Below, piece after piece: positions 11,931 through 63,365 of a DNA stretch of 64,000 nucleotides. A model generated the notes under the pieces. It searched no databases. It was not told the DNA's origin and saw only the letters and a program-made list of their open reading frames with translations. Source of the DNA: Pavona decussata. Lineage: Eukaryota. Position 1 is the first letter of the stretch, and each line of letters opens with the position of its first letter. The DNA is taken from positions 6,696,001 through 6,760,000 of the forward strand of contig CDRNST010000006.1 in assembly GCA_977016875.1 (NCBI GenBank). Direction: 5' to 3'. The translations under genes and the position numbers were made by a program.

Positions 11931-13435
11931 TCAGAGATGAGCTCCCAACCACCACTGGGTGGTGGATTGGCTTCCCTGTGTACAGCGGAACTTTGGGTTG
12001 ATGTGTGCATAGTGGCCAAAGTTGTCTTCCTCTCTCACTGAACCCGCCTTTGGCCTAAACTGACAGGTAGCGTATGTACTGTCAGTATGCAGAAAGTTGC
12101 TTTTAGCACCCTGCCAAAAAGGTACCGTTTGATGGATCCCGATGTGTCCGCGGATGTTGATGTATTCAACTTTTTTGCATTTGTTGCTGACAAGGTCATC
12201 CACGATGTTGAAGTCTTTGATGTTTCCACGCACGTAATCTCTGAAATCGACGCCGTAGGTCGGGTAGCTGCATGTTGCTCGCCAGTGAGTGGAGTGACTC
12301 TGTAGGGACTTCATTCGTGCCAAACTCAAGCGGTACAGATTCCAGTTCTGTGCGTTCTCGTTCACTGGAGAGTTGTACTTGAAAGGAATCCTCTGAAAAG
12401 CGGGCAGCTTACGATTTCGAGTACTCCATGAGGTGACTAGGGTCCAGGCAGTGCCAGGCTCGGACTTGAGATCACAGTAAGCCGGGTAACTGTTTCCGCC
12501 ATTATCGTAAAGTCTGTAGACTCCACATTTTGAGGCTCCTCTCAGCAGATAATCAAGGCAGGAGGTTGGACGGAAGAGTTTTCGCTGAATTTTAGTTGAT
12601 TTAGGACAATCGTCTCCCTAGGAAAAAAAGAGAGAGAGAGAAAAAAAAAAAAGAACAAAGAATTAAAATCGCTGACCTTTATGGCACGAAAAATATCGCA
12701 ATATTGTCCACGACTCCATTAATGTACAGATTAGTTCAGACATTGACATTGTGAGGAGCGAATTCAGGGATCAACGTGGTCGACCAGAACTTTTTGTTAC
12801 AATTTGCTCTGATTATATTTTTAGTTTCTTTTTCTACTAAAATATCTTAAAAAGCGAATGAAATTACAAAAATAGATTAACTTGTGAGCTTTCACTCGGC
12901 AAGAAAAACTCGAAACTTAGACATCAGTGTTTGAAGTATTTTACCTCGCATCCCAGTGTAAGAACTCGTTTGTGCCGTCTGTGCTTAGCAGCTGCTGCAA
13001 GTGCCTGATGAAGAAAGATTTGAAAATTAGGCAGTTGAATAGTGAGGATCATATTCTTGTTGTTAAATCAGACATGGATTTTGTCCATCGAATAACTGAA
13101 ATCCTGGGATTCCTGCGACTTTGTAGGTGGCGGGAGTAATTATAATATAATTGTAAGTTATATTTCTTGGTCATGCGGCGTTACTAAGCAAAACTATAGA
13201 CAAGAGTATTAAGCCCTAAAATAGGCTCAATAAAACGGTCATTTCCTTCCTTTCCGGGTTACGTAGCTCCATGCATCGCTTGCCGGTTTGAATTTCGTCC
13301 CTAACATTGTGAGTTTGGTGATAATTGTGCACATTTAACACTGGAAAGAACGTTAGAGGAATAGTGTTGTGTCGCAGACCAAACACTTACGAGAAAAGTG
13401 ATGCCAATAAAAGCCGCGATTATCTTAAATGCCAT
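11931..13435 (-). CDS. g1: secreted fibrinogen-related/intelectin-like protein, 263 aa; exons 13435-13391, 13004-12945, 12617-11931
   Basis: GT-AG phase-0 introns. MAFKIIAAFIGITFL/ALAAAAKHRRHKRVLTLGCE/GDDCPK...PTSCLDY...GVY...YCD...AWTLV...EDNFG...TTQWWLGAHL*. The SCxDY-GVY-YCD-WTL motif matches the start of fibrinogen-related domains. AATAAA on the minus strand near 11800. Confidence 0.9.
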
Positions 13436-16400
13436 CGTTAGATTTCCTCGAAACTCGCTAGTTTTGAATTTAGCTCCAAGAAAAAACAGGGTTTGGAAAC
13501 CGCTTCGTTGCTGACCGCGAGTATCTCCTCAACAAACGAGCAGTCTAGGCTGTGTGTTATATTACGTACCACCGAAATATCAGGTGAATAAATCAAAAAC
13601 ACGAAAACGTATTCCACTTAACATGTTTTGGGGACTAGACAAATGGAGCAAAAAAAATTCGGTTGTTGCTGTGACAACTTGATGTCAACCGGAGTTTGTC
13701 ATTTTCATTTTTCTAATGGTTCGTTTCTAGAGCCTGAGTGCACGGCAAGCAAGGTGTTAAGTCTGGGATCATTTATTTATCCACGAGACAATTTGAAACT
13801 GAATGCAGATTCTTTCGATAAAAAAGCATTATTATTCTTGTTGATTGTTGAAAAGTTTTTTGTTTTTAAATTTGAGGTTTTTGGTTAATGCGCTGTAAAA
13901 CTGATGCATTATTTTGAGTCGGAGCAAACAATAAATTTGAAACTTCAGTACTCCTTCGTCCTGCGAGAAAGAGATTGTTTTCCTTTTCTGCTTCGAAGCA
14001 GAAAGGAAACCTCTGGCTTGCAGGGTAGTTCCCATTACATAAGAAAAGAGATCCGCTGCTACCTGTCGTATGTCTATACTTACGATTCACCCGCTATAAT
14101 TTGTCAAAGTCAATTTGGTGGGTTCTTGTACAGCTAATCACTCTAAGGTTGTGAATGTTTACAGAATGAATTGTTTAGTTGTATATGTACACTGTACGTA
14201 ATATTCAATACATATTCTAGTTTTGGAAATTGTTAGTTAAATCTTTATATATCATACCTTACGATTCCATACCTCATTCAGATCAAGCCGTATTTTTGCA
14301 TTTTTCATGTTGAGTTCAGTCAGTGATTTGAGGAAACAGTGTTTGGATTGTTAACAGTAGTAATAGTAAATAGTAATAATCAGGGATTAGTAAAGTGCGT
14401 TTGATTTGTCTTTTCTCTGCTAAAAGTTTCTGCTAAAACCAGAAATTCGTTATTAAAAGTGGATTTCAGGGAGGAGGTTGTCGAGAATTACCATGTATCA
14501 AACTTTGTTCTGGTACAATGCAATAAACTCAGTGAATGTAGCAAAACTCAACACAGTGAGTCAGTGATATGAGGAATCAGTGTTCTGATTGCTTACATAA
14601 AACAATAACAATTTCTTACCTGGAAACTTTTTGGCAGTGAAATTAAGGAATAAAGTAAGTCTGCATGCTGGAATATTCAGAACTGCGCTTGTGTTAAGTT
14701 TTTCCGAATCAACAAGCCCACGAGACCCATTCGCATGGAAGATGAACATGTATTTAGGAATACGACGCAAATTATTTCGGTGCAACTCAATTTGTGGCCG
14801 GGATATTCAAACTCCGTAAACTAAAGAAATTTGGCCAAAAGCTTTGGCTGATCAAATTTAAGATCTCTAAGCTCTAAAAGAGTCACAACATCAACTTTTG
14901 TCTTTTCCTTATATTTCTCTAAATTGATGTAGCGTGGACTTTATAGACGAATCTCCGATGGAACCAAAAAACGCGAATGTCAGCTTCCAAACCTTTATTT
15001 CTCAGCTTTGATCAGTGAATCTTTTACCAAGTACCTTATAGGTATTCTGGGTTTTAACATCTTTCAAATCGTTTTTGCAGAAATTATTTTTCATCGGATT
15101 TATATACAAAGCCTGCATTTAGCGCCATATTTGCCATAATTCAAAATGGCGTACAGGCAAAAAAGATTTCCTCTTCCCCTCTTAGGTGCATTTGCAATGC
15201 GAAAAGATCGCTGACTAAACCACAAGCTTTTTTTAGGATTGGTAGGCAAGTCTGTAGCATTATGATACAAATGGATGACTGATGAAACGTTTGGTTGTTG
15301 AAGTCAATCGACTGTTTGCATGTTTTCGTAAGATACTGTTCCCGCCATTTAGTTTCAGTGTAAGCGATTCGCGAATCCATGCCTCATTTGTGTAATCAAA
15401 GCATCCCCATCTCGTAAAACTCAACCGAGTTACACCTTCAAACATGAAATATACATCTCAAGTACTTTTTTGTGACCGCAAAGATGAGAAATGGTTATAT
15501 GTACTAAACGATAAAGCGTGTCTTGTATGGTCAACACAATTAACATGGCGATTTTTAATTACCTCATTTTGATACGCCTCGCACTCATCATTCGCCTATT
15601 CAATTCTTAAACATTAATTTCTTGAAACTGAAAGCCGACGTCTTTCAGGTCATTTTTGTTGTCGTTGTTGTTGAACAACATAATTTAGGCACATATTGTA
15701 CGCAATAATATTGTACGAATTTGTAAGGCTAGGAAAGATTTGATTTTCCACGTTTTTCTGAGGGTCGAAATATTATTCATCTTGTCCTGAGAATTCTTTA
15801 AAGAGAATCACACCCATGAACTTCCGCATACCAAGCTACTGCGAGACTCGTGGTAAAGTGGGTCAGGGAGTCGGTTAGAGATTTTAGCAATTACATGGAA
15901 TGGCGACACAGTCAGCGATCGTCGGATGGCACACAGCTGTTCCATATGATCGATAGCTTATTTTTATTATAACCGCCAGAAAAACCAGGCTTAATGTTTT
16001 CGCTGCTTGTGTTCCAGACACTCAATGAAATTTTCAATTTACAAACACGCGTTTGAGGTTGCTCCTTCTAAGATGACTGAATTGGCATCACAAAACTGAT
16101 AAAGCAATCGAGAGTCAGTACAGCTTTGTCGAGCTTACATGCACCTGCCAAAATGAAATGAGAGATTGTAAGAAATCCGAACGAGGCTGGCGGAGTGAAG
16201 CAGTTGTTTTAGGATCACAAGTAAAATAGCGATTGAACTGTTTGGCAGCTGGAAAATGGCACTGGAATACAAAAACAAAAGAATTTGTAAAAACGTACAA
16301 CTAAGGGGAGAGACGCTGTACAATCCATTTCGTACCTGAATATCATGAACTATTTTCTTGATTCTGTTGGAAAGCCGATCACAATCATTATTATAAAAGT

Positions 16401-18777: not shown

Positions 18778-20933
18778 TAGCCGCAATGATAGTCGCAGTC
18801 AACGGCATCTTAGAACGCGGAGAAGGCGGGAAAGGACGTGACCATGGCCACCGGGATAGTAGCAGCAGTGTTAGCAATTCTCTGTACCAGGCTAGCTCGG
18901 CCAGTACCCTGAGAGACACCGAGAGTATCAGCGAGGTAATTCCTGGTCCTAAGTTAAATATGAATCTTTTTAGTGGAGAGAAAGACGGAAGTTTTTTCTA
19001 ATGTTTGTTGTCTGACAAACTTGTTGGCCTGCACGGGTGGACCTATGGAGTTTTCTTGTTGGTTACTATCTTCTGTGTGGTAGTTTGCTGACATGTTTTT
19101 GTCAGATATCCTTACTTTAAAGTTGGATAAACTCAAGTTTTTTATTGGTTACTACTGTCAGAGGTATTCTCGCCCCAGTCCCTTTGGGTAGAAGGACGGA
19201 AAGTGAGGAGGTTGGCCGAGGAGCTGCTTTCATTTCTGGTGAGTTTATTACTTACTTCTCTGTGCCTCCGAGTGCTCGTACATCTTTAAGAGATTAGTTT
19301 CTAACGATAAACAAGAAATTCTAATGAATTATGATAAGAGATACCTATCAGGTCAAGGAAAGACTTTCATTACTTCGGTCGAATTATAAACACTTACACA
19401 CACTTAGTAAAAAAAACAATGTCAGTGAGAGGGAGCCAGGTGAAGTGAGGCCTCGAGATCCAATGGCTGTTCTGTTGAACTGCATTCAGAATTACAGGCC
19501 GTCAGCGGATAATAGCGCTAGTGAAGGACGGTTGTTAACAGAGCATCTGCGCATGCCTAATGGCGGTCAGCGAAAGACTGAATCAAAGGAACCTGGTGAA
19601 GTAGGTTAGTGATACTGTTAGCGCTAGTTTATTTATCAGAATTGCTTAAGAATCATCATCCAGGAAAATCTCTTAGTATTACATTGGATATTCAATGACG
19701 TTCACTGAATTTGGTTTTGAACAATTTCGAAGGTAACTGATTAGCCCTTTCATTCTTGGAGTCAACAAAGAAAAAAAAATAAAGAAACCGGTTGAGTCTG
19801 TAGTTGGACTACTCAACTAAAAGCTATTCAGTTGTACTTTTTATCTTGGTCGCTCTTTTGAGACGAACTCTTATTGTGTAATTCAAAGTACATAGTTTTT
19901 CTCCAGTCAGCTTTCCTGAAAGACGCCTGCCAAAAATACCAAACGTGGGCACAAAAATGTATTGTAATGCAACAAGACGGTGAAGGCGCGGTACAGTAGT
20001 GGTTTGCGCGCTGGACTTTTCGGATGTTCGGTAAAATATTGGAGGGTTGGTGATTCAACGATAAGTTGTTCTCTGCATTGTCGTGTTGTAACTTTACTCC
20101 ACATTGTCTGTCTTCACCCAGGTATATAAATGGGTACCGGTTACATAACCCTGCAATGGACTAGCATCCCATCCAGGATAATGAAGGGGAATACAAATAC
20201 TCCAAGTTACTTTATAGTAGAGCTAACCGGCTTAAAGTGTGACTTGAAACAAGTACACCAGGTTTTAATTTTTTACCTCTTTTGTTATTTGCAGTCCCAA
20301 GGAAACTCTCTCCCGGTGAAGTGGTAGTGTGGAAGCCGTCCGGTGAAGTTGTGAACCTTCCTCCTCCTTTACCTGGAAAAGGCACATTGGATGACGAACC
20401 TGTGGATGTGAAGAACACTAAAACCCCGGCGGAACTCGAAGTCTTTCCGAGGAAAGCCGACGGAGAGCCGAGTCACGACAAGCGTTTTCTTCATGCTTCG
20501 GATTTGTTGCCTGGAACGCTTGGCACAGATACTTCTTTTCCCACTGCACAACAACGACAACAGAAACAGCAACAGCCGCAACAACAACACGCTAAGCCCA
20601 GGGTAATTCATGTTGAAGAAAAGAACAGTCAGCTATCAGAGACAAGTTTACAAAACACTTATTCTGTAGAAGAGCGTAGACAGGGGCTTCTGCATTGGCT
20701 GATGATAACAGAGAGGAAGGAAAGAAAAATGTTTTCACGAGCGAACAAGATGGATGAGGCTTTAAGGGAGAAAGTAACGGGGCTGCTGAACTTGACAGCC
20801 TCAACAGCCAACTAAAATCCAAGTTATGCTACCGTCAGTTGATAACAGTGTTCATGAAGAAAACTCGGCACACGTTTCTGTTGATCAGGATACGTTTGGT
20901 GACGTATCTTCCATTTCTGGAGGCGATTTTTGA
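18778..20933 (+). pseudogene. Duplicated 3' exons of the unrelated plus-strand gene, copy 2 (degraded)
   Basis: Homologous to 1657-10464. The middle exon acceptor is removed by a deletion (~19419); the terminal exon from 20295 has a frameshift near 20683 and a further deletion near 20797. Confidence 0.7.
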
Positions 20934-22716: not shown

Positions 22717-24248
22717 TCAGAGATGAGCTCCCAGCCACCACTGGGTGGTGGATTGGCTTCCCTGTGTGCAGCGGAACTTTGGGTTGATGTACCTATAGTG
22801 GCCAAAGTTGTCTTCCCCACTCACTGAACCCGCCTTTGGCTTAAACTGACAGGTAGTGTATGTACTGTCAGTATGCAGTAAGTAGCCGTTAGCAATCTGC
22901 CAAAAAGGTACCGTTTGGTGGATCCCGATGTGTCCGCGGATGTTGATGTATTCAACTTTCTTGCATTTGTTGTTGTCAAGGTAATCGATGACGTTGAAGT
23001 CTTTGAAGCTTCCACGAACGTAATCTCTGAAATCGATGCCGTGGGTCGGGTAGCTGCATGTTGCTCGCCAGTGAGTGGAGTGACTCTGTAGGGACTTCAT
23101 TCGTGCCAAACTCAGGCGGTACAGATTCCAGTTCTGTGCGTTCTCGTTCACTGGAGAGTTGTACTTGAAAGGAAACTTGTCAAAAGCGGGAAGCTTACGA
23201 TTTCGAGTACTCCAGGACATGATTAGGGTCCAGGCAGTGCCAGGCTCGGACTTGAGATCACAGTAAGCCGGGTAACTGTTTCCACCATTGTCGTAAAGCC
23301 TGTAGACGCCACATTTTGAGGCTCCTCTCAGCAGATAATCAAGGCAGGAGGTTGGACGGAAGAGTTTTCGCACAGTTTTAGTTGATTTAGGACAATCGTC
23401 TCCCTAGAAAAAGAAAAAGCAACAAAGAATTAAAATAATCGACTTTAGTCTGGCACGAAGAAGATCGCAGCTTTCTCCACGACACCAGAAATGTACATAT
23501 TCTAAACCTTCGGCCGGGATTGCCGGTGAGGAGCGAAATATTCGCGATCGCGGCATTCAGGAATCAACCCAGTCGACCCGAACTTCTTATTGCTAAAAAT
23601 TCGGTTGTAATTGCTCTGATTTTCATCTTTTACGTTTTGAAGATCATTTGAACTCCCGATCACGACTTTTTCTTATAAAATTTCTTCAGCCCGTCAAAGT
23701 GAGTGAAATTGCATGATTTTTCAGCTATAAATAAACCCGGTATCAGACAGTGAAGTTTACCTCGCATCCCAGTGTAAGAACTCGTTTGTGCCGTCTGTGC
23801 TCAGCAACTGCTACAAGTGCCTAGAAGAAGATAAAAAAACGATTTTAATTTTGGGCAGTTCAATAGTGAAGATCATATTCTTGTAGTTAAACTCATTCAC
23901 GGGATTTTGTCCATCCTATAACTGAGATCCTGAGATTCCTGCGATTTTGTAGGTATGACTATGAAAACGGTAAACGGCGTGAGTAATTATAATTATTTCT
24001 TGATCATGCGGCGTTACTTCCTCAAATAGGCTCAATAAAACGGTCATTTCCTTCCTTTACGCCTTAGTTCCATGCATCGCTCGCCGGTTTGAATCTCGTG
24101 CTCAATTTCAAAATGTTGAACTCGGTGATAATTTGGCAGATATAAAACTAAAAGGGATCGTTCCATTAATAGTTTTGTGTGACAAACAAAATTAATCACT
24201 CACGAGAAAAGAGATGCCGATAAAAGCCGCGATTGCCTTAAATGTCAT
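22717..24248 (-). CDS. g2: secreted fibrinogen-related protein, 263 aa; exons 24248-24204, 23820-23761, 23403-22717
   Basis: MTFKAIAAFIGISFL/ALVAVAEHRRHKRVLTLGCE/GDDCPK...; same exon sizes (45/60/687 bp), intact splice sites and ORF. Confidence 0.9.
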
Positions 24249-28840: not shown

Positions 28841-30306
28841 TCAGAGATGAGCTCCCAACCACCACTGGGTGGTAGATTGGCTTCCCTGTGTGCAGCGGAA
28901 CTTTGGGTTGATGTAGTTATAGTAGCCAAAGTTGTCTTCCTCTTTCACTGAACCCGTCTTTGGCTTAAACTGACAGGTAGCGTATGTACTGTCAGTATGC
29001 AGAGACTGGACGTTAGCGGTCTGCCAAAAAGGTACCGTTTGGTGGATCCCGATATGTCCGCGAATGTTGATGTATTCAACTTTTTTACATTTGTTGTTAC
29101 CATTGTAATCCACAATGTTGAAGTCGTTGAAGTTTCCACGAAGGTAATCTCTGAAATCGACGCCGTGGGTCGGGTAGCTGCATGTTGCTCGCCAGTGAGT
29201 GGAGTGACTCTGTAGGGACTTCATTCGTGTCAAACTCAGGCGGTACAGATTCCAGTTCTGTGCGTTCTCGTTCACTGGAGAGTTGTACTTGAAAGGAATC
29301 TTGTGAAAAGCGGGAAGCTTACGATTTAGAGTACTCCAAGACATGACTAGGGTCCAGGCAGTGCCAGGCTCGGACTTGAGATCACAGTAAGCCGGGTAAC
29401 TGTTTCCGCCATTATCGTAAAGCCTGTATACGCCACATTTTGAGGCTCCTCTCAGCAGATAATCAAGGCAGGAGGTTGGACGGAAGAGTTTTTGCTGAAT
29501 TTTAGTTGATTTAGGACAATCGTCTCCCTAGGAAAAAAAAAAACGAAAAAAAAATTAAAATCGTTGACTTTTTTGGCGAAAAATATTTTATATCGCAATA
29601 ATCTCCAGGACTCCAGTAATGTACATATTCAAAAATTTATTTATACATTCGATCATATATTTTGTAATCTTTTTAATAAAATATCTTTAAAAGCGACTGA
29701 ACGAAACAACAGAAAATGAATAAACGTTTAACTTGGCAAATTTCAGGAAAAACTCAAAAGTTAAACATCAGTGTATGAAGTATTTTACCTCGCATCCCAG
29801 TGTAACAACTCGTTTGTGCCGTTTGTGGTCAGCAGCTGCTGCAAGTGCCTGGAAGATGAAGAAAGATTTCAAACTTCGATAGTTTAATAGTAAAGATCAT
29901 ATTCTTGTACGTAAACTCAGTCACGGGATTTTGTCCATCGAATAACTGAGATCCTGAGATTCCTGTGATTTTTTTGGGTTATTAATGGTAAAAAGCGTGA
30001 GCAATTAAATTATGTTTCTTGGTTATGCGACGACCTTACTAAGCAAAACTATAGACAAACATAAGCCCAATTTTTCTGCACTCTATAATCGTTATCAGTA
30101 ACGTAAACATAGGCTAAATAACTGGCATTTTACGGGTTAGATCCATGCATCGCTCGCCTGCTGAAACTTGATTTCCTTCCCAACTGCAAAATGTTGAACT
30201 CGGTGATAATTTTGCAGATATAGAACTAAATAAGGTCGTTCGATTAATATAAAATGCTTACGAGAAAAGTGATGCCAATAAAAGCTGCGATTATCTTAAA
30301 TGTCAT
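28841..30306 (-). CDS. g3: secreted fibrinogen-related protein, 263 aa; exons 30306-30262, 29848-29789, 29527-28841
   Basis: MTFKIIAAFIGITFL/ALAAAADHKRHKRVVTLGCE/GDDCPK...; intact. Confidence 0.9.
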
Positions 30307-34868: not shown

Positions 34869-36443
34869 TCAGAGATGAGCTCCCAACCACCACTGGGTGG
34901 TAGATTGGCTTCCCTGTGTGCAGCGGAACTTGGGGTTGATTCGCTCATAGTGGCCAAAGTTGTCTTCCCCACTGACTGACCCCGACTTTGGCCTAAACTG
35001 ACAGGTAACGTATGTACTGTCAGTATGCAGAAAGTGGCCGTTAGCAGTCTGCCAAAAAGGTACCGTTTGATGGATCCCGATGTGTCCGCGGATGTTAATG
35101 TATTCAACTTTCTTGCATTTGTTACCACCAATATAATCGACAATGTTGAAGTCCTTGAAGCTTCCACGAACGTAATCTCTGAAATCGACGCCGTGGGTCG
35201 GGTAGCTGCATGTTGCTCGCCAGTGAGTGGAGTGACTCTGTAGGGACTTCATTCGTGCCAAACTCAGGCGGTACAGATTCCAATTCTGTGCGTTCTCGTT
35301 CACTGGAGAGTTGTACTTGAAAGGAATCTTGTGAAAAGCGGGAAGCTTACGATTTAGAGTACTCCAGGAGGTGATTAGGGTCCAGGCGGTGCCAGGCTCG
35401 GACTTGAGATCACAGTAAGCCGGGTAACTGTTTCCGCCATTGTCGTAAAGTCTGTAGACGCCACATTTTGAGGCTCCTCTCAGCAGATAATCAAGGCAGG
35501 AGGTTGGACGAAAGAGTTTTCGCTCAACTTTAGTTGATTTAGGACAACCATCTCCCTAGAAAAAAAAAAGAGAAAAAAAAAAAAAACAAAAAAACAAAAA
35601 CAAACAAAGAATTAAAATCGTTGACCTTTTTGGCACGAGAAATATCGCAATATTGTCCACGACTGCGGTAATGTACAGATCAGTTCAAACATTGGCATTG
35701 TGAGGAGCGAGTTCAGGGATCAGCGTGGTTGACCGGATTTTGTTGTTGCAATTGCTCTGATTTTTAATCTTTCCCGGATTCAGGACAGTTTGATATCCCG
35801 ATCGTATTTTTATTTATTTATTTATTTTTACAAAAATTTCTTAAAAACCGACTGCAATTACAAAAATAGATAGACTTGGGAGCTTTCACTCGGCAAGAAA
35901 AACTGGAAACTTAAACATCAGTGTGTGAAGTATTTTACCTTGCATCCCAGTGTAAGAACTCGTTTGTGCCGTCTGTGCTCAGCAGCTGCTGCAAGTGCCT
36001 AGAAGATGAAGAAAGATTTTAAATTTAGACAGTTGAAGAGTGAAGAACATATTCTTGTAGATAAATCAGTCACGGGATTTTGTCCATCGAATAACTGAGA
36101 TCCTGAGATTCCTGCGATTTTGTAGGTTAAAAAAGGTAAACGGCGTGAGTAATTATAATGTAATTTCAAATTTCTTGGTTATTCGGCGTTACTAAGCAAA
36201 ACTATAGACGAGAGTATTAAGCCCTAAAATAGGCTAAATAAAACGGTCATTTCCTTCCTTTCCGGGTTACGTAGGTCCATGCATGGCTTGCCGGTTTGAA
36301 TTTCGTTCCTAACATTTTGAGTTTGGTGATATTTTGCACGTTTAACACAGGGAAAGATCGTTATATGAATAGTTTTGTGTCGCAGACAAATCACTTACGA
36401 GAAAAGTGATGCCAATAAAAGCCGCGATTATCTTAAATCCCAT
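34869..36443 (-). CDS. g4: secreted fibrinogen-related protein, 263 aa; exons 36443-36399, 35998-35939, 35555-34869
   Basis: MGFKIIAAFIGITFL/ALAAAAEHRRHKRVLTLGCK/GDGCPK...; intact. Confidence 0.9.
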
Positions 36444-41602: not shown

Positions 41603-44547
41603 CTGGCTGCAATGAGCTCATGAGAGTCGCCGTCAACGGCATCTTACAACGCCGAGAAGGCGGGAAAGGACGTGACCATGGCCACCGGGATAGTAGCAGC
41701 AGTGTTAGCGATTCTCCGTACCAGGTTAGCTCGGCCAGTACCCTAAGAGACAGTGAGAGTAGGAGGGGTAATGCCTGTTGCATTGGTTAAGTTAAATATG
41801 AATCTTTGTAGTGGAGAGAAACACAAATTTTTACAAATGCCTGTTGTCCGACAAACTTGTTGGCCTGTGCTGATGGACCTATGGAGCTTTCTTGTTGGTA
41901 ACTATCTTCTGTTTTGTAGTTTGGTAACATTTCTTGTCAGATATCCTTATTTTGAAGTTGGCTGAGCTCAAGTTTTTTATTGGTTACTACTGTCAAAGGC
42001 GTTCTCGCCCCAGTCCCTTTGGGCAGAGGGACGGAAAGTAGGGAGTGGGGAGGGGAGGTTGGCCGAGGAGTTGCCTTCAGTTCTGGCGAGCTTGTTACTT
42101 ACTTTCTCTGTGCCTCTGAGTGCTCGTACATTTTTAAGAGATAAGTTGCTAACGATAAACAAGAAGTTCTAATGGATTATGATTAGAGGTATCTATCAAG
42201 TCAAGGAAAGACTTTCATTTCTGCTGTACAATCAGAAACACTTACACTTACTTAATAAAATTAAAAAGAAAATCTTATAGAAGGAGGAACCGTTGGCGAA
42301 TGTCTCCCTGCTTCTTAGACTCGTCTGAAACGTTGTATTGGAAATTTCAACAAGTATTTCTATCAGTTTTAAGAACCACAGGAAAATATTTTCTGTTTCT
42401 TGTAACAACAAAGCATTTAATTTAATGTGGTACTAGAGAGAAGGAAATTAATGCTTGTTGACTTTTCAATAAATGCTCACGCTATCCGCAGTGAGGATTT
42501 TACCCACAGTCTCAAAGACAAGAACCACCTTTTAAAGCATAATGTATAGCACTACGGGAAAGAACTGCGTGGTAGTTTTTATTTGGATGGTTTGAATGGC
42601 GACGCTTAGAATTTGAACTGAAGACTCAAAAGCTATAACCACTTTTTACAGCGTAATAAACGTTATCACAGGAAAGCACTGCTCAGTTGCATAATCAAAA
42701 ATGAGAAACACCTGGAGCTTAATTATACAACATCATACTAGTACCACAGCAAAGTTTTGCTTAGTAGCTTTCAACTTATTGGTCACACATTAGAATGCCA
42801 ACTACAGAATCAAGGAAGAACTGTCATGTATAGCATCATTAATGTTAATAACACCATAGGAAAGTGCTGGTCACTACCATTGAAATGGTCACATTTTCAG
42901 TTGGTAGATTATCAAAGACCTAAGGTTATCTCACCTTCCCTGTGCGGATTAGGATTGAAATATGTTTTACCAGTAAATTGTGCTTTTCTCTCAGGATTCT
43001 ATCACTGATGTCAGTGAGAGGGAGCCAGGTGAAGTGAAGCCTCGAGATCCAATGGCTGTTCTGTTGAACTGCATTCAGAATTACAGGCCGTCAGCGGATA
43101 ATAGCGCCAGCGAAGGAGAGTTGTTAACAGAACATCTGTGCATGCCTAATGCGGGACAGGGAAAGACTGAATCAAAGGAACCTGGTGAAGTAGATTAGTG
43201 ATACTGTTGGCGCTAGCTAGTTTATTTATCGGCAGAATTGCTTAAGAATAATCATCCCGGCAAATCTCTTAGTATTACATGAGATATTCAAGCACGTTCA
43301 CTGAATTTTGTTCTTGAACAATTTCGAAGGTAGCTGATTAGCCCTTCATTCTCGGAGTCAACAAAGAAAAAAAAAATAAACAAACCGGTTTAGTCTGTGG
43401 TTGGAACACTCAACTAAACTGCTATTCAGTAGTACTTTTTATCTTGGTCGTTCTTTTGAGACGAACTCTTATTGTGTAATTCAAAGTACATCGTTTTTTT
43501 CCAGTCAGCTTTCCTGAAAGACGCCTGCCAAAAATACCAAAAGTGGGCACAAAAATGCATAGTAATACGACAAGGCGGTGGAGGCGCGGGAGCGTAGTGG
43601 TTTGCGCGCTGGACTTTTCGGGTGTTCGGTAAAATATCGGAGGGTTGGTGATTCAACGATAAGTTGTTCTCTGCATTGTCGTGTTGTAACTTTACTCCAC
43701 TTTGTCTGTCTTCACCCAGGTGAAAAATGGGTACCGGTTACATAACCCTGCAATAGACTAGCATCCCAACTAGGATAGTGAAGAGGAATACAAATACCCC
43801 AAGTTTCTTTATAGTAGAGCTAACCGGCTTAAGGTGTGACTTAAAACAAGTACATCAGGTTTCAATTTTTCACTTCTTTTGTTATTTGCAGTCCCAAGAA
43901 AACTCTCTCCCGGTGAGGTGGTAGTGTGGGTGCCGTCCGGTGCAGTTGGGAACCTTCCTCCTCCTTTACCTGGGAAATTCACATTGGATGACGAACCTGT
44001 GGATGTGAAGAACGCCAAAACTCCCGGTGCACTCGAAGTCTTTCCGATGAATGCCGACGGAGAGCCTAGTCACAACGAGCGTTCTCTTCATGCTTCGGAT
44101 TTGTTACCGGGAACGCTCGGCACAGATACTTCTTTTCCCACTGCACAACAACGACAACAGAAACAGCAACAGCAGCAACAACAACAACACGCTAAGCCCA
44201 GGGTAATTCATGTTGAAGAAAAGGACAGTCAACTATCAGAGACAAGTTTACAAAACACTTATTCTGTAGAAGAGCGCAGACAAGGGGCTTCTACATTGGC
44301 TGATGATAACAGAGAGGAAGGGAAGAAAAATGTTTTCACGAGCGAACAAGATGGATTAGGCTTTAAGGGAGAAAGTAATGGAGCTGTTGAACTTGATGAG
44401 GAAGACGTCGAACCTCACCAGCCAACTAAAATCCAAGTTATGCTACCGTCAGTTGATAACAGTGTTCATGAAGAAAGCTCGGCACACGTTTCTGTTGATC
44501 AGGATACGTTTGGTGACGTGTCTTCCATTTCTGGAGGCGATTTTTGA
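41603..44547 (+). pseudogene. Duplicated 3' exons of the unrelated plus-strand gene, copy 3 (exon from ~41603; exon 42995-43193; terminal exon 43892-44547)
   Basis: Homologous to copy 1. The middle exon donor is mutated GT>AT (43194-43195) and the first exon donor is out of phase by a small deletion; the terminal exon is open (polyQ, ...GGDF*). Confidence 0.7.
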
Positions 44548-46322: not shown

Positions 46323-47827
46323 TCAGAGGTGAGCTCCCAACCACCACTGGGTGGTAGATTGGCTGTCCTGTGTGCAGCGGAACTTTGGGTTGATGTAGTT
46401 ATAGTGGCCAAAGTTGTCTTCCTCTTTCACTGAACCCGCCTTTGGCCTAAACTGACAGGTAGCGTATGTACTGTCAGTATGCAGAAAGTGGCCTTTAGTA
46501 TCCTGCCAAAAAGGTACCGTTTGGTGGATCCCGATGTGTCCGCGGATGTTGATGTATTCAACTTTTTTGCATTTGTTGCTGACAAGGTCATTCACAATGT
46601 TGAAGTCTTTGATGTTTCCACGCACGTAATCTCTGAAATCGACGCCGTAGGTCGGGTAGCTGCATGTTGCTCGCCAGTGAGTGGAGTGACTCTGTAGGGA
46701 CTTCATTCGTGCCAAACTCAGGCGGTACAGATTCCAGTTCTGTGCGTTCTCGTTCACTGGAGAGTTGTACTTGAAAGGGGTCTTCTGAAAAGCGGGCAGC
46801 TTACGATTTCGAGTACTCCAGGATATAATCAGGGTCCAGGCAGTGCCGGGCTCGGACTTGAGATCACAGTAAGCCGGGTAACTGTTTCCGCCATTATCGT
46901 AAAGTCTGTAGACGCCACATTTTGAGGCTCCTCTCAGCAGATAATCAAGGCAGGAGGTTGGACGGAAGAGTTTTTGCTGAATTTTAGTTGATTTAGGACA
47001 ATCGTCTCCCTAGAAAAAGGAAAAGCAACAAAGAATTATCGACTTTAGTCTGGCTCGAAAAATCTCGCAAGATTCTCCACGACACCAGAAATGTACATAT
47101 TCTAAACCTTCGGATTGCCGGGGAGGAGCGAAATATTCGCGAGCGCGGCATTCAGGAATCAACCTAGTCGACCTGAACTTCTTATTGCTAAAAATTCGGT
47201 TGTAATTGCTCTGATTTCCATCTTTTACGTTTTGAAGATCGTTTGAACTCCCGATCACGACTTTTTCTTATAAAATTTCTTTCAAAGCGAGTGAAATTGC
47301 TCGAAAGAAATAAACTTTTCAGCTGTAAATAAACATCAGACAGCGAAGTTTACCTCGCATCCAAGTGTAAGAACTCGTTTGTGCCGTTTGTGCTCAGCAA
47401 CTGCTGCAAGTGCCTGGAAGATGAAGAAAGATTTTAATCTTGGACAGTCAAATAGTGAAGATCATATTCTTGTAGTTAAACTCAGTCACGGGATTTTGTC
47501 CATCGTATAACTGAGATCCTGAGATTCCTGTGATTTTTTAGGTATAAAAACGGTAAATGGCGCGAGTAATTATAATTATTTCTTGATCATGCGGCGTTAC
47601 TAACTCAAATAGGCTCAATAAAACGGTCATTTCCCTCCTTTACGGCTTAGTTCCATGCATCGCTCGCCGGTTTGAATCTCGTGCTCAATTTCAAAATGTT
47701 GAGATCAGTGATAATTTGGCAGATATAAAACTAAATGAAGATTGTTCCATTAATAGTTTTGTGTGACAAACAAATCACTCACGAGAAAAGAGATGCCAAT
47801 AAAAGCAGCGATTGTCTTAAATGCCAT
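46323..47827 (-). CDS. g5: secreted fibrinogen-related protein, 263 aa; exons 47827-47783, 47413-47354, 47009-46323
   Basis: MAFKTIAAFIGISFL/ALAAVAEHKRHKRVLTLGCE/GDDCPK...; intact. Introns resemble g2; 3' flank resembles g1. Confidence 0.9.
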
Positions 47828-50800: not shown

Positions 50801-50873
50801 AAGTTGGGATCATTAAGTCCATCGAAGTAGCTCTACTCTTGTATGGCTGTGAGACATGGCCCATAATGAAAAA

Positions 50874-53837: not shown

Positions 53838-55372
53838 TCAGAGATGAGCTCCCAACCACCACTGGGTGGTAGATTGGCTTCCCTGTGTGCAGCGGAACTT
53901 GGGGTTGATTCGGTCATAGTAGCCTGAGTTGTCTTCATATCTCACTGAACCTGACTTTGGCTTAAACTGACAGGTAGTGGATGAACTGTCAATATGCACG
54001 ACGTAGCTTTTAGCGATCTGCCAAAAAGGTACCGTTTGGTGGATCCCGATGTGTCCGTGGGTGTTGATGTATTCACCTTTTTTGCATTTGTTGCTACCAA
54101 TGTAATCCACAATGTTGAAGTCTTTAAAGCTTCCACGAACGTAATCTCTGAAATCGACGCCGTGGGTCGGGTAGCTGCATGTTGCTCGCCAGTGAGTGGA
54201 GTGACTCTGTAGGGACTTCATTCGTGCCAAACTCAGGCGGCACAGATTCCAGTTCTGTGCGTTCTCGTTCACTGGAGAGTTGTACTTGAAAGGAATCTTC
54301 TGAAAAGCGGGCAGCTTACGATTTAGAGCACTCCAGGAGGTGATTAGGGTCCAGGCAGTGCCAGGCTCGGACTTGAGATCACAGTAAGCCGGGTAACTGT
54401 TTCCGTCATTATCGTAAAGCCTGTAGACGCCACATTTTGATGCTCCTCTCAGCAGATAATCAAGGCAGGAGTTTGGACGGAAGAGTTTTCGCTTAATTCT
54501 AGTTGGTTTAGGACAATCGTCTCCCTAGAAAAAAAGAGAGAGAGAGAGAAAAAAAAACGAACAATGAATTAAAATCGTGGACCTTTTTGGCGCGAAAAAT
54601 ATCGCATTATGGTCCACGACTCCAGTAATGTACAGATCAGTTCAGACATCTACATTGTGAGGAGCGAATCCAGGGATCAACGTGGTCGACCGGATTTTGT
54701 TGTTGCAATTGCTCTGATTCTAATCTTTTTTCGGTTTCAGGATAGTTTGAAGTCCTGATAATATTTTTAATATTTTTTTTACTAAAATATCTTAAAAAGC
54801 GCATGAAATTACAAAAATAGATAAACTTGTGAGCTCTCACTAGGCAAGAAAAACTCGAAACTTACACATTAGTGTGTGAAGTATTTTACCTTGCATCCCA
54901 GTGTAAGAACTCGTTTGTGCCGTCTGTGCTCAGCAGCTGCTGCAAGTGCCTAGAAGATGATGAAAAACGATTTTAAATTTAGACAGATGAAGAGTGAAGG
55001 TCTTATTCTTGTAAATAAATCAGTCACGGGATTTTGCCCATCAAATAACTGAGATCCTGCGATTCCTGCGATTTTGTAGGTTCAAAAAGGTAAATGGCGT
55101 GAGCAATTATAATATAATTATCAAATTTCTTGCTCATTTGGCCTTACTAAGCAAAACTAGACAAGCGTATTAAGCCCTAAAATAGGCTCAATAAAACGGT
55201 CATTTCCTTCCTGCTTGCCGGTTTGAGTTTCGTTCCTAACATTTTCAGTTTTGTGATAATTTTGCACGTTCAACACTGGAAAAGATCGTCACATGAATAG
55301 TATTGTGTCGCAGACAAAACACGTACGAGAAAAGTGATGCCAGTAAAAGCCGCGATTATCTTAAAATGCCAT
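53838..55372 (-). pseudogene. g6: probable pseudogene of the family; exons 55372-55327, 54949-54890, 54524-53838
   Basis: Exon 1 is 46 bp (extra T), reading ATG GCA TTT TAA. Exon 3 is open but has substitutions at otherwise invariant sites (LYR>LCR, KVE>KGE, NIRG>NTHG, DNFG>DNSG). Confidence 0.8.
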
Positions 55373-58300: not shown

Positions 58301-58937
58301 TGCCATGCAACGTAAATTAAAATACTTTTTACTTGCAGTGCATTCGATTGCCCCAGACTATGGAGGGGAATATTGGACAAAAATGTGGTTGGATCGTACC
58401 GTATTGCTTTGTATTCGGTGATGCTATGAACCTACCAGTACGGTACTATGTCGTACCCGGTAGGATGTTATATCGAAAACAGCGATGGTATTATATCGTA
58501 CCCAGTAACACAATTAATCCTTCGACATGCTATTATATCGTACCCGATGATGATATGTCGTACCCAGTGATGCTATATCGTACCCTGATGTCGTACCCGG
58601 TGATGCAATGTCGTACTCGGTGATGCAATGTCGTATCCGGTGATGCAATGTCGTACTCGGTGATACAATGTCGTACATTATGGTCAGCGGGTTTATTTTG
58701 CTTAGACAGGATCACGTGATATTTTTGTAGGCGGCCATTTTTTTTTTCGGCGAGAAGTCGGTAGAACAAGCAAATTTTGATTTATCACCAAAATATGGAA
58801 GGTCAACATCAGTCACCCTTTCAGCTGGTTAGCGTAAACATCAGAGCAGTGTTGAGTGATGTTATAAATAAGTTAGAAAGTACAGAGTATAGCAACAACA
58901 TCGGGACGACGAGATAAAACGTATCTGAGAAACGAAT

Positions 58938-59488: not shown

Positions 59489-60325
59489 ATTAAAGCTACA
59501 TTACATTTACATTAAGAGTTAAATTTATAATACACGTATTAGACGGGCTTATAAACGAGGGGGGGGGGGGGGGGCTTATATCAGGAACAATATCTTTGTT
59601 AGTAAATAGATGGGCTTATATCTGGGGGAGGGCTTAAAACCGGGGGGGGGGGGGGATTAACGTAAAATTTTTACCGTATAGTGGCTTTGACGGTTAAATA
59701 TAATGGCGTTTTGCCCAGAACACTCGGCCCCTAAGCGAGACAACGAGCATCCCCCGCGCCTCAACTGACCTGTTGCGTAAACTCACTAGGAATTCCCCAC
59801 ATGTTCTCATTTTCTCACGAGTGAGCCAGTTTAAGTAAAAGCTTATAACATTTTTTGTGAATTCAGTTGGGCTCTGGCATGGAATCCCTAATCTAAGTAA
59901 TATATCGATGCAAAATCTTATACTGATACAAGTTAAGTTTAACTAAGCTATTGGTAATTGGTATGTAAGTTTATTTTGATATCCTGTGAACTGATAATGT
60001 AATATATGCGTTAACTAAATAACCTCAAGTTTTCCGAGGCACAATCAACTGCCGGGCCTTGTTGTACTTGTTCATGTTCGCCGCTGGTGGATCCAGTCAC
60101 CGAGTTTTCTAGTTGTTGCAATGCATTTCTCGCATTGCGCAAAATTTCTGTCGCTCTGGAGAGAACATTCTTCTCGGACGTTTGCTTCGACACTTTTCAA
60201 AAGTTAGCTATGGAGGAGCAGACGACGCGAAGAGCAAGTCATATCACGTGATGTCAACTTCCCGCCTTTTCTCGTGAAAAAACCCCGCTGACAATGCTGT
60301 TCGCCGGCATCCGGACATTTACGAT

Positions 60326-60786
60326 ATGGCATCACCGAGTACGACATTGCATCACCGGGTAAGACATTGCATCACCGAGTACGACATTGCATCACCGAGT
60401 ACGACATTGCATCACCGAGTACGACATTGCATCACCAAGTACGACATTGCATCACCGAGTACGACATTGCATCACCGGGTACGACATTGCATCACCGGGT
60501 ACGACATTGCATCACCGAGTACGACAGTGCATCACCGAGTACGACATTGCATCACCGGGTACGACAGTGCATCACCGAGTACGACATTGCATCACCGAGT
60601 ACGACATTGCATCACCGGGTACGACAGTGCATCACCGAGTACGACATTGCATCACCGGGTACGACAGTGCATCACCGAGTACGACATTGCATCACCGGGT
60701 ACGACAGTGCATCACCGAGTACGACATTGCATCACCGAGTACGACATTGCATCACCGAGTACGACATTGCATCACCGGGTACGACG
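60326..60786. repeat. 20-bp tandem repeat (GTACGACATTGCATCACCGR, ~23 units) in the right TIR; ~4 inverted units at ~58589-58677 in the left TIR
   Basis: Seen directly; head-to-tail with no spacers. Confidence 0.97.
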
Positions 60787-61843: not shown

Positions 61844-63365
61844 TTAGAGATGAGCTCCTAACCACCACTGGGTGGTAGATTTGCCGTCCCGTGTGCAGCG
61901 GAACTTGGGGTTTACTGTGCCATAGAAGCCAAAGTTGTCTTCACTTGACAATGAGCCCGACTTTGGCTTAAACTGACAGGAGCCCGTGTGTGAACTTTCA
62001 ATATGCAGGGAGTAGGTGTTAGCGATCTGCCAAAAAGCTACCGTTTGGTGGATCCCGATGTGTCCGCGGACGTTGATGTATTCAACTTTTTTGCATTTGT
62101 TGTTCACGGCAAGGTCATCCACAATGTTGAAGTCCTTGAAGCTTCCCCGAACGTAATCTCTGAAATCAACGCCGTGGGTCGGGTAGCTGCATGTTGCTCG
62201 CCAGTGAGTGGAGTGCCTTTGTAGGGACTTCATTCGTGCCAAGCTCAAGCGGTACAGATTCCAGTTCTGTGCGTTCTCGTTCACTGGAGAGTTGTACTTG
62301 AAAGGAATCTTCTGAAAAGCGGGGAGCTTACGATTTAGAGTACTCCAGGACATGACTAGGGTCCAGGCAGTGCCAGGCTCGGACTTGAGATCACAGTAAG
62401 CCGGGTAACTGTTTCCGCCATTGTCGTAAAGTCTGTAGACGCCACATTTTGAGGCTCCTCTCAGCAGATAATCAAGGCAGGAGGTTGGACGGAAGAGTTT
62501 TCGTTCAATTTTAGTTGATTTAGGACAATCGTCTCCCTAGGAAAAAAAAAAACAAACAAAGAATTAAAATCGTTGACCTTTTTGGCACGAAAAATATCGC
62601 AATATTGTCCACGACTCCAGTAATGTACAGATCAGTTCAAACATTGATATTGAAAGGAGCGAATTCAGGGATCAACGTGGTCGACGGTAACTTCTTGTTG
62701 CAATTCACTCTGATTTTAATCTTCCCCGGTTTCAAGATAGTTTGAAATCCCGATAATATTTTTAATATTTTGTTTTACTAAAATATCTTAAAAAGCGACT
62801 GCAATTACAAAAAATAGAAAAACTTGAAACTTAAACATAAGTGTACGAAGTATTTTACCTTGCATCCCAGTGTAAGACCTCGTTTGTGCCGTCTGTGCTC
62901 AGCAGCTGCTGCAAGTGCCTAGAAGATGAAGAAGAGGAAAGATTTACTTTTACAGTTGAAGAGTGAAGATCATATTCTTGTACTTAAAATCAGTCACGGG
63001 ATTTTGTCCTTTGAATAACTGAGATCCTGAGATTCCTGCGATTTTGTAGGTTCAAAAAGGTAAACGGCGTGAGGAATTATAATATAATTATCAAATTTCT
63101 TGGGCATTCGGCGTTACTAAGCAAAACTATAGACAAGCGTACTAAGCCCTAAAATAGGCTAAATAAAACGGTCATTTCCTTTCTTTCCGGGTTAGGTCCA
63201 TGCATCACTTGCCGGTTTGGGTTTCGTCCCTAACATTTTAAGTTTGGTGATAATTTTGCACGTTTAACACTGGAAAAGATCGTTATATGAATAGTTTTGT
63301 GTCGCAGACAGAACACTTACGAGTAAAGTTATGCAAATAAAAGCCGCGATTATCTTAAATGCCAT
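61844..63365 (-). CDS. g7: secreted fibrinogen-related protein, 265 aa, most divergent copy; exons 63365-63321, 62918-62859, 62536-61844
   Basis: MAFKIIAAFICITLL/ALAAAAEHRRHKRGLTLGCK/GDDCPK...; two extra codons in the variable C-terminal half; TAA stop and a distinct proximal 3' UTR. Confidence 0.9.

What the first reader, a model, noticed from the sequence alone, without database searches (positions are those of the whole stretch)
11931..63365. Tandem family of secreted fibrinogen-related proteins with a fixed scaffold and five hypervariable, CDR-like patches
Seen: across g1-g7 the N-terminal half and core are nearly identical even at silent sites (e.g. SPVNENAQNWNLYRLSLARMKSLQSHSTHWRATCSYPT), yet five short patches vary strongly. 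V1 AF[QRI/DKF/HKI/HKI/QKT/QKI/QKI]PF; V2 [DLVS/YLDN/YNGN/YIGG/DLVS/YIGS/DLAVN]NKC; V3 FWQ[GAKSNF/IANGYL/TANVQS/TANGHF/DTKGHF/IAKSYV/IANTYS]; V4 GSx[RE/SG/KE/SG/KE/RY/SS]EDN; V5 G[HYAH/HYRY/YYNY/HYER/HYNY/YYDR/FYGT]. Many changes swap charge or aromatic residues. Established: fibrinogen-related domains (ficolins, intelectins, snail FREPs) bind ligands through C-terminal loops and diversify in invertebrate immunity. Inference: a diversifying secreted recognition or effector repertoire (microbial glycans, symbionts, self/non-self, or prey targets). The C-terminal half is not a canonical FBG sequence, so the family may be functionally uncharacterised; I cannot confirm novelty without a search.
Basis: partly seen in the sequence, partly recalled or inferred. 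Interest (0 to 1): 0.88.

Follow-up and report, generated by a model that had tools for sequence, protein, structure and literature searches.

The report
Diversifying coral fibrinogen-like lectin gene array
A stony-coral genome carries a large tandem array of expressed genes for small secreted proteins with a very divergent fibrinogen/intelectin-type fold. Their surface loops vary sharply between copies, which fits a germline repertoire of recognition proteins of a kind known from other invertebrates, though this subfamily has never been studied.

Summary
The window has seven minus-strand, three-exon paralogs (six look intact; g6 looks like a pseudogene). Their 228-230-aa last exons are 85-92% identical, and V1-V5 (10% of columns) carry 45% of the amino-acid variation.

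They belong to a ~400-kb array of about 35 copies, and the genome holds at least 141 matches to the domain. RNA-run contigs cover only the exons and show both predicted GT..AG splice joints.

Pfam finds nothing in the window copies. An AlphaFold model (pLDDT 90) matches only fibrinogen-related domains: intelectins Z 10.6-11.0, ficolins about 10, next unrelated fold Z 4.9.

Patch dN/dS is 1.2 against 0.30 for the scaffold. My own codon site models on 21 array copies support about 6% of sites at omega about 3, also with five separate trees to allow for strong recombination (LRT 27, p 1e-6). V1, V3, V4 and V5 are flagged; V2 is not.

Caveats:
- Recently duplicated pairs show no clear excess of patch changes.
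- I could not test whether the patches cluster in 3D, because no coordinates were available.
- No binding data exist.

Verdict: a real, expressed, diversifying family of secreted FReD-fold proteins, most likely lectin-like recognition proteins. It is a new variant of a known kind. First-stage notes of this scan flagged the same family on neighbouring and other DNA of this genome.

The parts
11931..13435 (-). g1: exon 1 13435..13391 (45 nt, MAFKIIAAFIGITFL), exon 2 13004..12945 (60 nt), exon 3 12617..11931 (228 aa plus stop). Looks intact.
22717..24248 (-). g2: exon 1 24248..24204, exon 2 23820..23761, exon 3 23403..22717. Looks intact. This copy was modelled and is the one the RNA contigs were laid on.
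   Evidence: Splice joints 23402>23760 and 23819>24203, each with 'cut +1' and GT..AG on the minus strand, appear in RNA-run contigs. AlphaFold model pLDDT 90.3.
28841..30306 (-). g3: exon 1 30306..30262, exon 2 29848..29789, exon 3 29527..28841. Looks intact.
34869..36443 (-). g4: exon 1 36443..36399, exon 2 35998..35939, exon 3 35555..34869. Looks intact.
46323..47827 (-). g5: exon 1 47827..47783, exon 2 47413..47354, exon 3 47009..46323. Looks intact.
53838..55372 (-). g6: exon 1 55372..55327 (46 nt; ATGGCATTTTAAG, a 1-nt insertion giving MAF-stop), exon 2 54949..54890, exon 3 54524..53838 (open, but with Y95C, R156H and F200S at conserved positions). Probable pseudogene, or a homopolymer assembly error combined with degenerating residues.
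61844..63365 (-). g7: exon 1 63365..63321, exon 2 62918..62859, exon 3 62536..61844 (230 aa). The most divergent copy, with one-residue insertions in V2 and after V3.
22789..22800 (-). V5 in g2 (residues 202-205, HYRY), directly after the conserved EDNFG motif. It holds the strongest selected sites (alignment columns 204, 206, 207). Given as an example of a patch; the other patches in g2 residue numbers are V1 75-77, V2 140-144, V3 170-175, V4 194-196.

Best explanation
The seven genes are part of a large, tandemly duplicated family in a stony coral, evolving by birth and death of copies. Each gene encodes a secreted protein of about 263 aa: a signal peptide, a short Cys-containing linker (C-x-G-D-x-C-P), and one very divergent fibrinogen-related (FReD, intelectin/ficolin-type) domain.

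The most likely function is extracellular recognition, as lectin-like binding proteins. In this reading a conserved core holds the fold and perhaps a common anchoring pocket (W168-Q169, H177-x-D-S180, E197-D-N-F-G201, T220-Q-W-W223). The loops that directly abut these motifs (V3, V4, V5, plus V1) differ between paralogs and tune what each copy binds.

The repertoire appears to be produced by block duplication, reshaped by gene conversion or recombination between copies, and kept diverse by positive selection at about a dozen loop positions.

Shown here: gene structure, expression, fold class, patch variability, recombination signal, and omega > 1 at some sites. Inferred: secretion, binding activity, ligand class (microbial or symbiont glycans or other surface molecules), and oligomerisation.
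For: - Gene model and expression: contigs from RNA runs cover exons 2 and 3 but not the introns. They carry joints that match the predicted splice sites exactly. Annotated orthologues have the same N-terminus.
- Fold: pLDDT 90.3, pTM 0.88. Intelectin-1 Z 10.9-11.0 (185-188 aa aligned, 3.5-3.6 A), XEEL 10.9, L-ficolin 10.0. 81 chains scored Z >= 8 and the 50 entries listed are all FReDs; the best non-FReD scored Z 4.9. All of the top 50 Foldseek hits are FReDs.
- Sequence link: the family profile matches an intelectin-type lamprey lectin (E 1e-6), XEEL (1e-4) and FIBCD1 (7e-4). PF00147 matches 4 of 48 family members.
- Domain context: relatives are fused to EGF, PAN, F5/8-C or GPS modules, which are all extracellular.
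- Diversification: patch dN/dS is 1.20 against 0.30 for the scaffold. Patch pN (0.34) exceeds intron divergence (0.22).
- Site models: M1a/M2a LRT 72.7 on one tree. With five partition trees it is 27.3 (p 1e-6), and M7/M8 gives 38.2 (p 5e-9). With 16 intact-looking copies it is 25.4.
- Recombination: delta-AIC of -175 for one breakpoint, and three further breakpoints also improve the fit.
- The same loops are the most variable across 44 homologues from other species or loci (2.32 against 0.96 bits, p 9e-8).
- A second, independent array (contig C270) also shows omega > 1 sites (LRT 26.3).
Against: - No binding, localisation or infection-response data exist for any member.
- Pfam and NCBI call all members uncharacterised.
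- The positions selected in the second array correlate only weakly with those here (Spearman 0.13).
- Recently duplicated pairs have dN/dS below 1 in the patches (0.53) and no significant patch enrichment. Most patch diversity is therefore old.
- V2 shows no selection signal.
- The site models are my own implementation, with fixed topologies, proportional branch lengths and naive posterior probabilities. The only check was that M0 reproduces IQ-TREE's likelihood.
- The LRT can be inflated by residual recombination or by multi-nucleotide changes.
- I could not test spatial clustering of the patches or the existence of a pocket.
- The homotrimer prediction gave no answer.
Confidence: 0.55

Rival explanations
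1. The loops are simply under relaxed constraint. Gene conversion and purifying selection keep the scaffold similar, while tolerant surface loops drift. The omega > 1 signal would then be an artefact of recombination, multi-nucleotide changes and conversion tracts brought in from more distant paralogs. The family could have any extracellular role that does not depend on diversity.
For: - Strong phylogenetic incongruence along the exon.
- Pooled patch dN/dS is only 1.2, and the patches were chosen after seeing the alignment.
- Patch pS is also raised (0.30), as expected for old or imported tracts.
- Close duplicate pairs show patch dN/dS of 0.53.
- Several copies are decaying: g6, L009, L016, L019.
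- The same loops vary across species, as ordinary unconstrained loops would.
Against: - The LRT stays at p of about 1e-6 with five separately inferred trees, which is a conservative design, and after dropping decaying copies.
- Estimated omega for the selected class is 2.8-3.5, not 1.
- Patch pN (0.34) exceeds the intron divergence (0.22).
- The variable residues sit directly beside the most conserved motifs and include charge and aromatic swaps.
Confidence: 0.25
2. The family consists of bulk structural or storage proteins, related to coral 'egg protein' and USOMP-5 (yolk and skeletal organic matrix components). High copy number would serve dosage, and the variable loops would have no functional role.
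For: - Published work says USOMP-5 homologues occur in Cnidaria and Porifera, most often in Homoscleromorpha, and carry fibrinogen-related subdomains (PMC6824150). The domain here has the same unusual taxon range: Cnidaria plus Oscarella.
- USOMP-5-like proteins share a conserved region with coral egg yolk proteins (PMC4890752; PMC7579821).
- A first-stage note of this scan calls related PAN-EGF-FReD genes USOMP5-like.
Against: - No sequence-level link was shown here. Two searches that should reach longer relatives returned no protein named USOMP-5 or egg protein.
- Dosage amplification predicts near-identical copies, not site-specific omega > 1.
- The family also occurs in sea anemones and a jellyfish, which have no skeleton.
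Confidence: 0.1
3. The proteins are secreted effectors (venom-like or antimicrobial) rather than sensors. In this reading the basic H-R/K-R-H-K-R stretch after the signal peptide is a propeptide cleavage site, and the loops diversify in an arms race with prey or competitor targets.
For: - The array copies keep a dibasic RHKR motif right after the predicted signal peptide. From my own knowledge, cnidarian toxin precursors often have this layout.
- Also from my own knowledge, FReD proteins (veficolins, ryncolins) occur in reptile venoms.
- Positive selection on surface loops is typical of toxins as well.
Against: - The dibasic motif is not conserved in Oculina, Stylophora, Acropora or Actinia orthologues.
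- No similarity to any known toxin family was found.
- Relatives are modules of large EGF, PAN or adhesion-GPCR-like extracellular proteins.
Confidence: 0.07

Closest known systems
Intelectins / X-type lectins (human ITLN1, Xenopus XEEL, lamprey LSVL)
   Same: - They are the best structural matches: Z 10.6-11.0 with 182-189 residues aligned.
- They are the best profile-to-sequence matches: 7e1e at E 1e-6, XEEL at 1e-4.
- Both groups are small secreted proteins with an N-terminal Cys-containing segment ahead of a divergent FReD, and in both Pfam's Fibrinogen_C model sees only the start of the domain.
   Different: - Identity is only 12-14%, and the sequence match covers only the A subdomain (about 50-70 aa).
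- The domain is shorter: about 213 aa against about 280 aa in the solved intelectin chains.
- The intelectin Ca2+ and exocyclic-diol binding residues could not be checked.
- The ficolin scores are within 1 Z unit, so a specific intelectin affiliation is not established.
Ficolins, FIBCD1, tachylectin-5A (canonical FReD lectins)
   Same: - Same fold and same overall domain length (Z 8.8-10.0).
- The conserved A-subdomain Cys pair and the C-x(n)-G-V-Y...Y-C-D...W-T motif are shared.
- From my own knowledge, ligand binding in these lectins lies in the C-terminal part of the domain. That is also where V3-V5 lie here.
   Different: - Pfam PF00147 finds no match in the window copies, even at E <= 1.
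- There is no collagen or coiled-coil stalk.
- The canonical P-subdomain sequence motifs are not recognisable.
- The family has its own conserved motifs (VPFWQ, HTDS, SEDNFG, STTQWW).
Diversified invertebrate FReD repertoires (Biomphalaria FREPs; mosquito and bivalve FREP expansions)
   Same: Both are large lineage-specific expansions of secreted FReD proteins with high sequence diversity, interpreted as an innate recognition repertoire (review PMC12074976, listed; otherwise my own knowledge).
   Different: - Snail FREPs carry IgSF domains, and their reported diversification is concentrated there and is partly somatic. Here the protein is a single domain, the diversity is germline, and it lies inside the FReD-like domain itself.
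- The domain lineage is different and much more divergent.
USOMP-5 / coral egg protein (EP-like) family
   Same: Both are reported in Cnidaria plus sponges (mainly Homoscleromorpha), with fibrinogen-related subdomains and no assigned function (PMC6824150; PMC4890752). The taxon range matches the one found here.
   Different: - Homology was not tested here, because I had no USOMP-5 or EP sequence, and none surfaced by name.
- Those proteins are known as yolk and skeleton-occluded components and are not described as hypervariable arrays.

Membership tests
Fibrinogen-related domain (FReD) superfamily | FReD three-dimensional fold across the whole domain | tested here: met
   The AlphaFold model (pLDDT 90.3) matches FReD chains over residues 14-228. 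81 chains scored Z >= 8 and the 50 entries listed are all FReDs; the next unrelated fold scored Z 4.9.
Fibrinogen-related domain (FReD) superfamily | Significant match to Pfam Fibrinogen_C (PF00147) | tested here: not met
   The window proteins give no Pfam hit at E <= 1. Only 4 of 48 family members match (best 3.6e-7), and relatives match only profile positions 4-47 of 221.
Fibrinogen-related domain (FReD) superfamily | A-subdomain motif with the conserved Cys pair (C...G-x-Y...Y-C-D...G-W-T) | tested here: met
   phmmer and the family profile align residues 16-68 to FIBCD1, MFAP4, tenascin, ficolin-3, angiopoietins and fibrinogen beta. C20 and C48 are conserved.
Fibrinogen-related domain (FReD) superfamily | P-subdomain Ca2+ site and ligand pocket | not testable with these tools
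   Scripts have no access to model coordinates, and the sequence alignment does not reach this region.
Intelectin / X-type lectin family | Closer in structure and sequence to intelectins than to other FReDs | tested here: inconclusive
   Intelectins rank first (Z 10.6-11.0), but ficolins score 9.4-10.0, within about 1 Z unit. The profile E-values are best for intelectin-type lectins but cover only the A subdomain.
Intelectin / X-type lectin family | Ligand-coordinating Ca2+ residues and disulfide-linked trimer | tested here: inconclusive
   The residues could not be mapped. The homotrimer prediction returned 'no answer'.
Diversifying immune-type recognition repertoire (FREP-like in the functional sense) | Multigene tandem family with site-specific positive selection in surface loops | tested here: met
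   At least 141 genomic matches, with about 35 copies in this array. omega of about 3 at 6-10% of sites with recombination allowed for. The selected sites lie in loops or at strand ends according to the model's secondary structure.
Diversifying immune-type recognition repertoire (FREP-like in the functional sense) | Demonstrated binding to non-self ligands, or induction on challenge | not testable with these tools
   Only presence in RNA-run contigs was shown. No condition-specific expression or binding data were available.
USOMP-5 / coral egg protein family | Sequence homology to B8VIU6 or to the Euphyllia/Galaxea egg proteins | not tested
No protein with that name appeared among the hits. 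The only support is matching taxon range and FReD subdomains reported in the literature.

The most novel reading that the evidence does not exclude
The genes represent a previously unrecognised, ancient lineage of FReD-derived binding modules. The domain occurs in Cnidaria and homoscleromorph sponges, and at 33-39% identity as tandem modules in proteins from bacterial metagenome bins. Corals would have expanded it into a germline repertoire of well over a hundred genes, with a conserved anchoring pocket and a positively selected, recombining rim. Such a repertoire would work as an innate, antibody-like discrimination system for symbionts, microbiome members and pathogens.
Probability: 0.2. Interest if true: 0.8.

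Novelty: new variant of a known kind. Interest (0 to 1): 0.55.

Why it matters
Corals depend on telling symbionts, commensals and pathogens apart using innate immunity alone. The receptors that would give this system specificity are poorly known.

This family is large (at least 141 domain matches in one genome), expressed and secreted-looking, and carries a lectin-type fold. Standard domain annotation misses it, so it is absent from published coral 'immune repertoire' counts.

It also shows strong exchange between paralogs, in a group where gene conversion was reported to be uncommon (PMC10236652). If binding differences between paralogs are confirmed, the family would give a tractable set of candidate specificity determinants for coral-microbe and coral-alga recognition. 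It would also add a second example, beside snail FREPs, of a diversified FReD repertoire, this time in a non-bilaterian animal.

Tried and rejected
- Pfam on the window proteins: no hit.
- Homotrimer prediction with three copies of residues 12-228: 'no answer', score 0.00. This is evidence neither for nor against oligomerisation.
- Naming the family through the literature: the NCBI locus names of orthologues occur in no paper. The Porites/Pocillopora tandem-duplication paper does not mention fibrinogen.
- Confirming the USOMP-5 / egg-protein lead by sequence: two further homology searches (a Nematostella and an Acropora relative) and two cluster look-ups returned only 'uncharacterized' names.
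- Combinatorial shuffling of whole patch 'cassettes': only one allele quartet (V2 with V4) shows all four combinations among 21 copies. Free reassortment of patches is not supported. The recombination signal is better read as partial conversion tracts plus block duplication.
- Same selected positions in a second array (C270): only a weak correlation (Spearman 0.13, p 0.05-0.08).
- 3D clustering of V1-V5: not possible, because model coordinates are not exposed to scripts. I can offer only a geometric inference from the secondary-structure string: V2 (140-144) and V3 (170-175) sit at the same end of the long 143-155/158-170 hairpin.
Exon 3 was searched by reference. Exons 1 (15 aa) and 2 (20 aa) were only read.

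Full report
**What is in the window.** The window (about 40% G+C) comes from a stony-coral genome. The closest proteins are from Porites, Montipora, Oculina, Acropora and Stylophora. It corresponds to contig C6:6696001-6760000 of a 602-Mb assembly.

Seven copies of a 687-693-nt open last exon lie on the minus strand, spaced 6.0-11.5 kb apart. Upstream of each I found two short exons:
- Exon 1 is 45 nt (MAFKIIAAFIGITFL, donor GTAAGT or GTGAGT).
- Exon 2 is 60 nt (ALAAAAKHRRHKRVLTLGCE, donor GTAAA).
- Exon 3 starts directly after a pyrimidine tract and AG.

The predicted protein has about 263 aa: a signal-peptide-like start, a basic stretch, a C-x-G-D-x-C-P linker, and one globular domain. Exon 3 was searched by reference, and exons 1 and 2 were only read.

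Full-length annotated orthologues in Montipora, Oculina and Stylophora have the same N-terminal layout. g6 has ATGGCATTTTAAG in exon 1, a 1-nt insertion that gives MAF-stop. It also replaces family-invariant residues (Y95C, F200S) and the nearly invariant R156 (R156H). It is probably a pseudogene.

**Expression.** Contigs from coral metatranscriptome runs, and from runs guessed to be RNA, were laid on g2. They cover exon 3 and exon 2 and leave the introns empty. They carry the joints 23402>23760 and 23819>24203, each with 'cut +1' and GT..AG on the minus strand, and these are exactly the predicted splice sites. Because the paralogs are 85-98% identical, this shows that the family is transcribed and spliced. 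It does not show that g2 specifically is expressed.

**The observation.**
- V1-V5 are 9.6% of columns and hold 45.5% of the amino-acid entropy.
- Highly variable columns are clustered (P = 0.0002).
- The scaffold is not silent-site identical. Its pS is 0.117, lower than intron 2 (p = 0.22) and the 3' flank (p = 0.16). This fits homogenisation of the exon or constraint on it.

**Wider context in the genome.** The domain has at least 141 matches in this genome.
- About 35 copies at 85-98% identity lie on C6 between 6.67 and 7.07 Mb, so the window shows only part of one array.
- More distant arrays lie on C15, C369, C285, C393, C73, C1, C183, C60 and C270. The C270 array has about 45 copies, each with an EGF module in the same exon.
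- The order of patch types along C6 repeats (for example the g3-g4-g5 types recur at 6.81-6.82 Mb and 7.03-7.06 Mb). This suggests duplication of multi-gene blocks.
- Several copies carry broken cysteines or frameshifts, which points to birth-and-death turnover.

**What the protein is.** Pfam gives no hit for the window proteins. phmmer and a 48-sequence family profile match solved structures only over the first 50-70 residues of the domain. The best matches are an intelectin-type lamprey lectin (E 1e-6), XEEL (1e-4) and FIBCD1 (7e-4).

An AlphaFold model built with that alignment is confident (pLDDT 90.3, pTM 0.88). A search that does not rely on Foldseek gave:

| Match | Z |
|---|---|
| Intelectin-1 (188 aa aligned, 3.5 A) | 10.9 |
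| ANGPTL3 | 9.4 |
| H-ficolin | 9.2 |
| FGL1 | 8.7 |
| Fibrinogen gamma | 7.8 |
| Next fold, a collagen C-propeptide | 4.9 |

A second look over Foldseek's matches gave intelectins 10.6-11.0 and ficolins 9.4-10.0. So the fold is FReD. A specific intelectin affiliation is not resolved.

The family has about 1100 cluster representatives at E <= 0.001. Members are all named 'uncharacterized'. They occur in corals, sea anemones, a jellyfish and Oscarella sponges, alone or fused to EGF, PAN, F5/8-C or GPS modules.

**Selection and recombination.** Nei-Gojobori counts over g1-g7 give dN/dS 1.20 in the patches (pN 0.34, pS 0.30) against 0.30 in the scaffold. By patch the values are V4 2.5, V3 1.6, V5 1.2, V1 1.1 and V2 0.6. 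The patches were defined from amino-acid variability, which biases this figure upward.

I therefore aligned 21 open array copies and wrote a codon-likelihood program. Its M0 likelihood equals IQ-TREE's (-3470.23). Results:
- On one tree, M1a against M2a gives LRT 72.7.
- The alignment is strongly recombinant. One breakpoint improves AIC by 175, and three more also help.
- With five partitions, each with its own tree, the LRT is still 27.3 (p 1e-6). M7 against M8 gives 38.2 (p 5e-9), with 6-10% of sites at omega 2.8-3.3.
- The flagged alignment columns are 10, 11, 67, 75 (V1), 171 and 175 (V3), 182, 193, 197 and 198 (V4), and 204, 206 and 207 (V5). V2 is not flagged.
- Dropping five decaying copies leaves LRT 25.4.

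Limits of this analysis are fixed topologies, proportional branch lengths and naive posterior probabilities.

Two further results temper the claim. Five independent recently duplicated pairs show patch dN/dS of 0.53 and only a non-significant excess of patch changes (8.3 of 42 against 4.2 expected, P = 0.064). Most patch diversity therefore predates the latest block duplications. In the independent C270 array, sites with omega > 1 are again supported (LRT 26.3), but their positions correlate only weakly with those here.

Across 44 homologues from other species or loci, the same patches are the most variable parts of the domain (2.32 against 0.96 bits, p 9e-8).

**Where the patches lie.** From the secondary-structure string:
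- V1 ends a short helix.
- V2 leads into the 143-155 strand.
- V3 is the tip after the 158-170 strand. V2 and V3 are therefore probably neighbours at one end of a long hairpin.
- V4 and V5 lie in the long 180-218 loop region.

In the primary sequence, V3, V4 and V5 directly flank the most conserved motifs: FWQ-[V3]-LHTDS and GS-[V4]-EDNFG-[V5]-INPKFRC. That is the pattern expected for a conserved anchoring site with a variable specificity rim. This is inference, not a result.

**Interpretation.** The best-supported reading (0.55) is a germline repertoire of secreted, lectin-like recognition proteins. The repertoire would be built by block duplication, reshaped by exchange between paralogs, and kept diverse by selection at about a dozen loop positions.

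The rivals are:
- Neutral loop drift with a recombination artefact (0.25).
- A bulk yolk or skeleton-matrix role related to USOMP-5 / egg protein (0.10). This is supported only by matching taxon range and FReD subdomains in the literature and was not confirmed by sequence.
- A venom-like effector role (0.07).

A homotrimer prediction gave no answer.

**Novelty.** Diversified FReD families (snail FREPs and others) and pervasive tandem duplication of coral immune-type genes (PMC10236652) are both known. New here are this unannotated, very divergent FReD lineage, its scale, the patch-wise selection inside the domain itself, and clear exchange between paralogs. I rate it a new variant of a known kind, with interest 0.55. 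First-stage notes of this scan had already flagged the same family just beyond this window and on other contigs.

Noticed in passing
P0128 (TNF36352.1, 1503 aa, 'Deltaproteobacteria bacterium' MAG) and P0123 (1379 aa, metagenome bin): Proteins assigned to bacterial metagenome bins carry two to four tandem copies of this same domain at 30-39% identity to g2. The family motifs are kept (VPFWQ, HTDS, SEDNFG, STTQWW). In P0128 the copies sit beside EGF_CA and TNFR-type modules. This could be gene transfer between kingdoms, mis-binned eukaryotic DNA, or an ancient shared module.
   Followed up: partly
window 3164-9054 (-): A BEL/Pao-type LTR retrotransposon with two long open frames. They hold DUF1759, DUF1758, Peptidase_A17, the integrase zinc-binding and core domains, and DUF5641. 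It lies just outside the gene array.
   Followed up: partly
window 9796-10464, 20282-20815 and 43879-44547 (+): A 177-222-aa open frame occurs three times at 90-93% identity. It is Gln-rich, looks disordered and has no Pfam match. It lies on the opposite strand, 1.5-1.9 kb beyond the 3' ends of g1, g2 and g5, within spacers of 10.3-11.0 kb (downstream of g1 the stretch ends at the Pao element). It may be an exon of a second co-duplicated gene or part of a repeat element.
   Followed up: no
window 60320-60785 (+): A minisatellite of 23 copies of a 20-nt unit (93% matches). It produces long spurious open frames in three reading frames, just downstream of g7.
   Followed up: partly
G000 contig C270, about 167-562 kb (loci L031-L050): A second large array of about 45 copies, in which an EGF-like module and the FReD-like domain share one exon. 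Its overall omega is about 0.8, and sites with omega > 1 are supported, largely at positions other than those in the window array.
   Followed up: partly
L002 (G000:C6:7024601-7025275), also P0002: The array copy most like g2 (98%) has lost the normal end. After ...QWWLGE its frame runs on for about 45 more residues, so it has a changed C-terminus or is a decaying copy.
   Followed up: no
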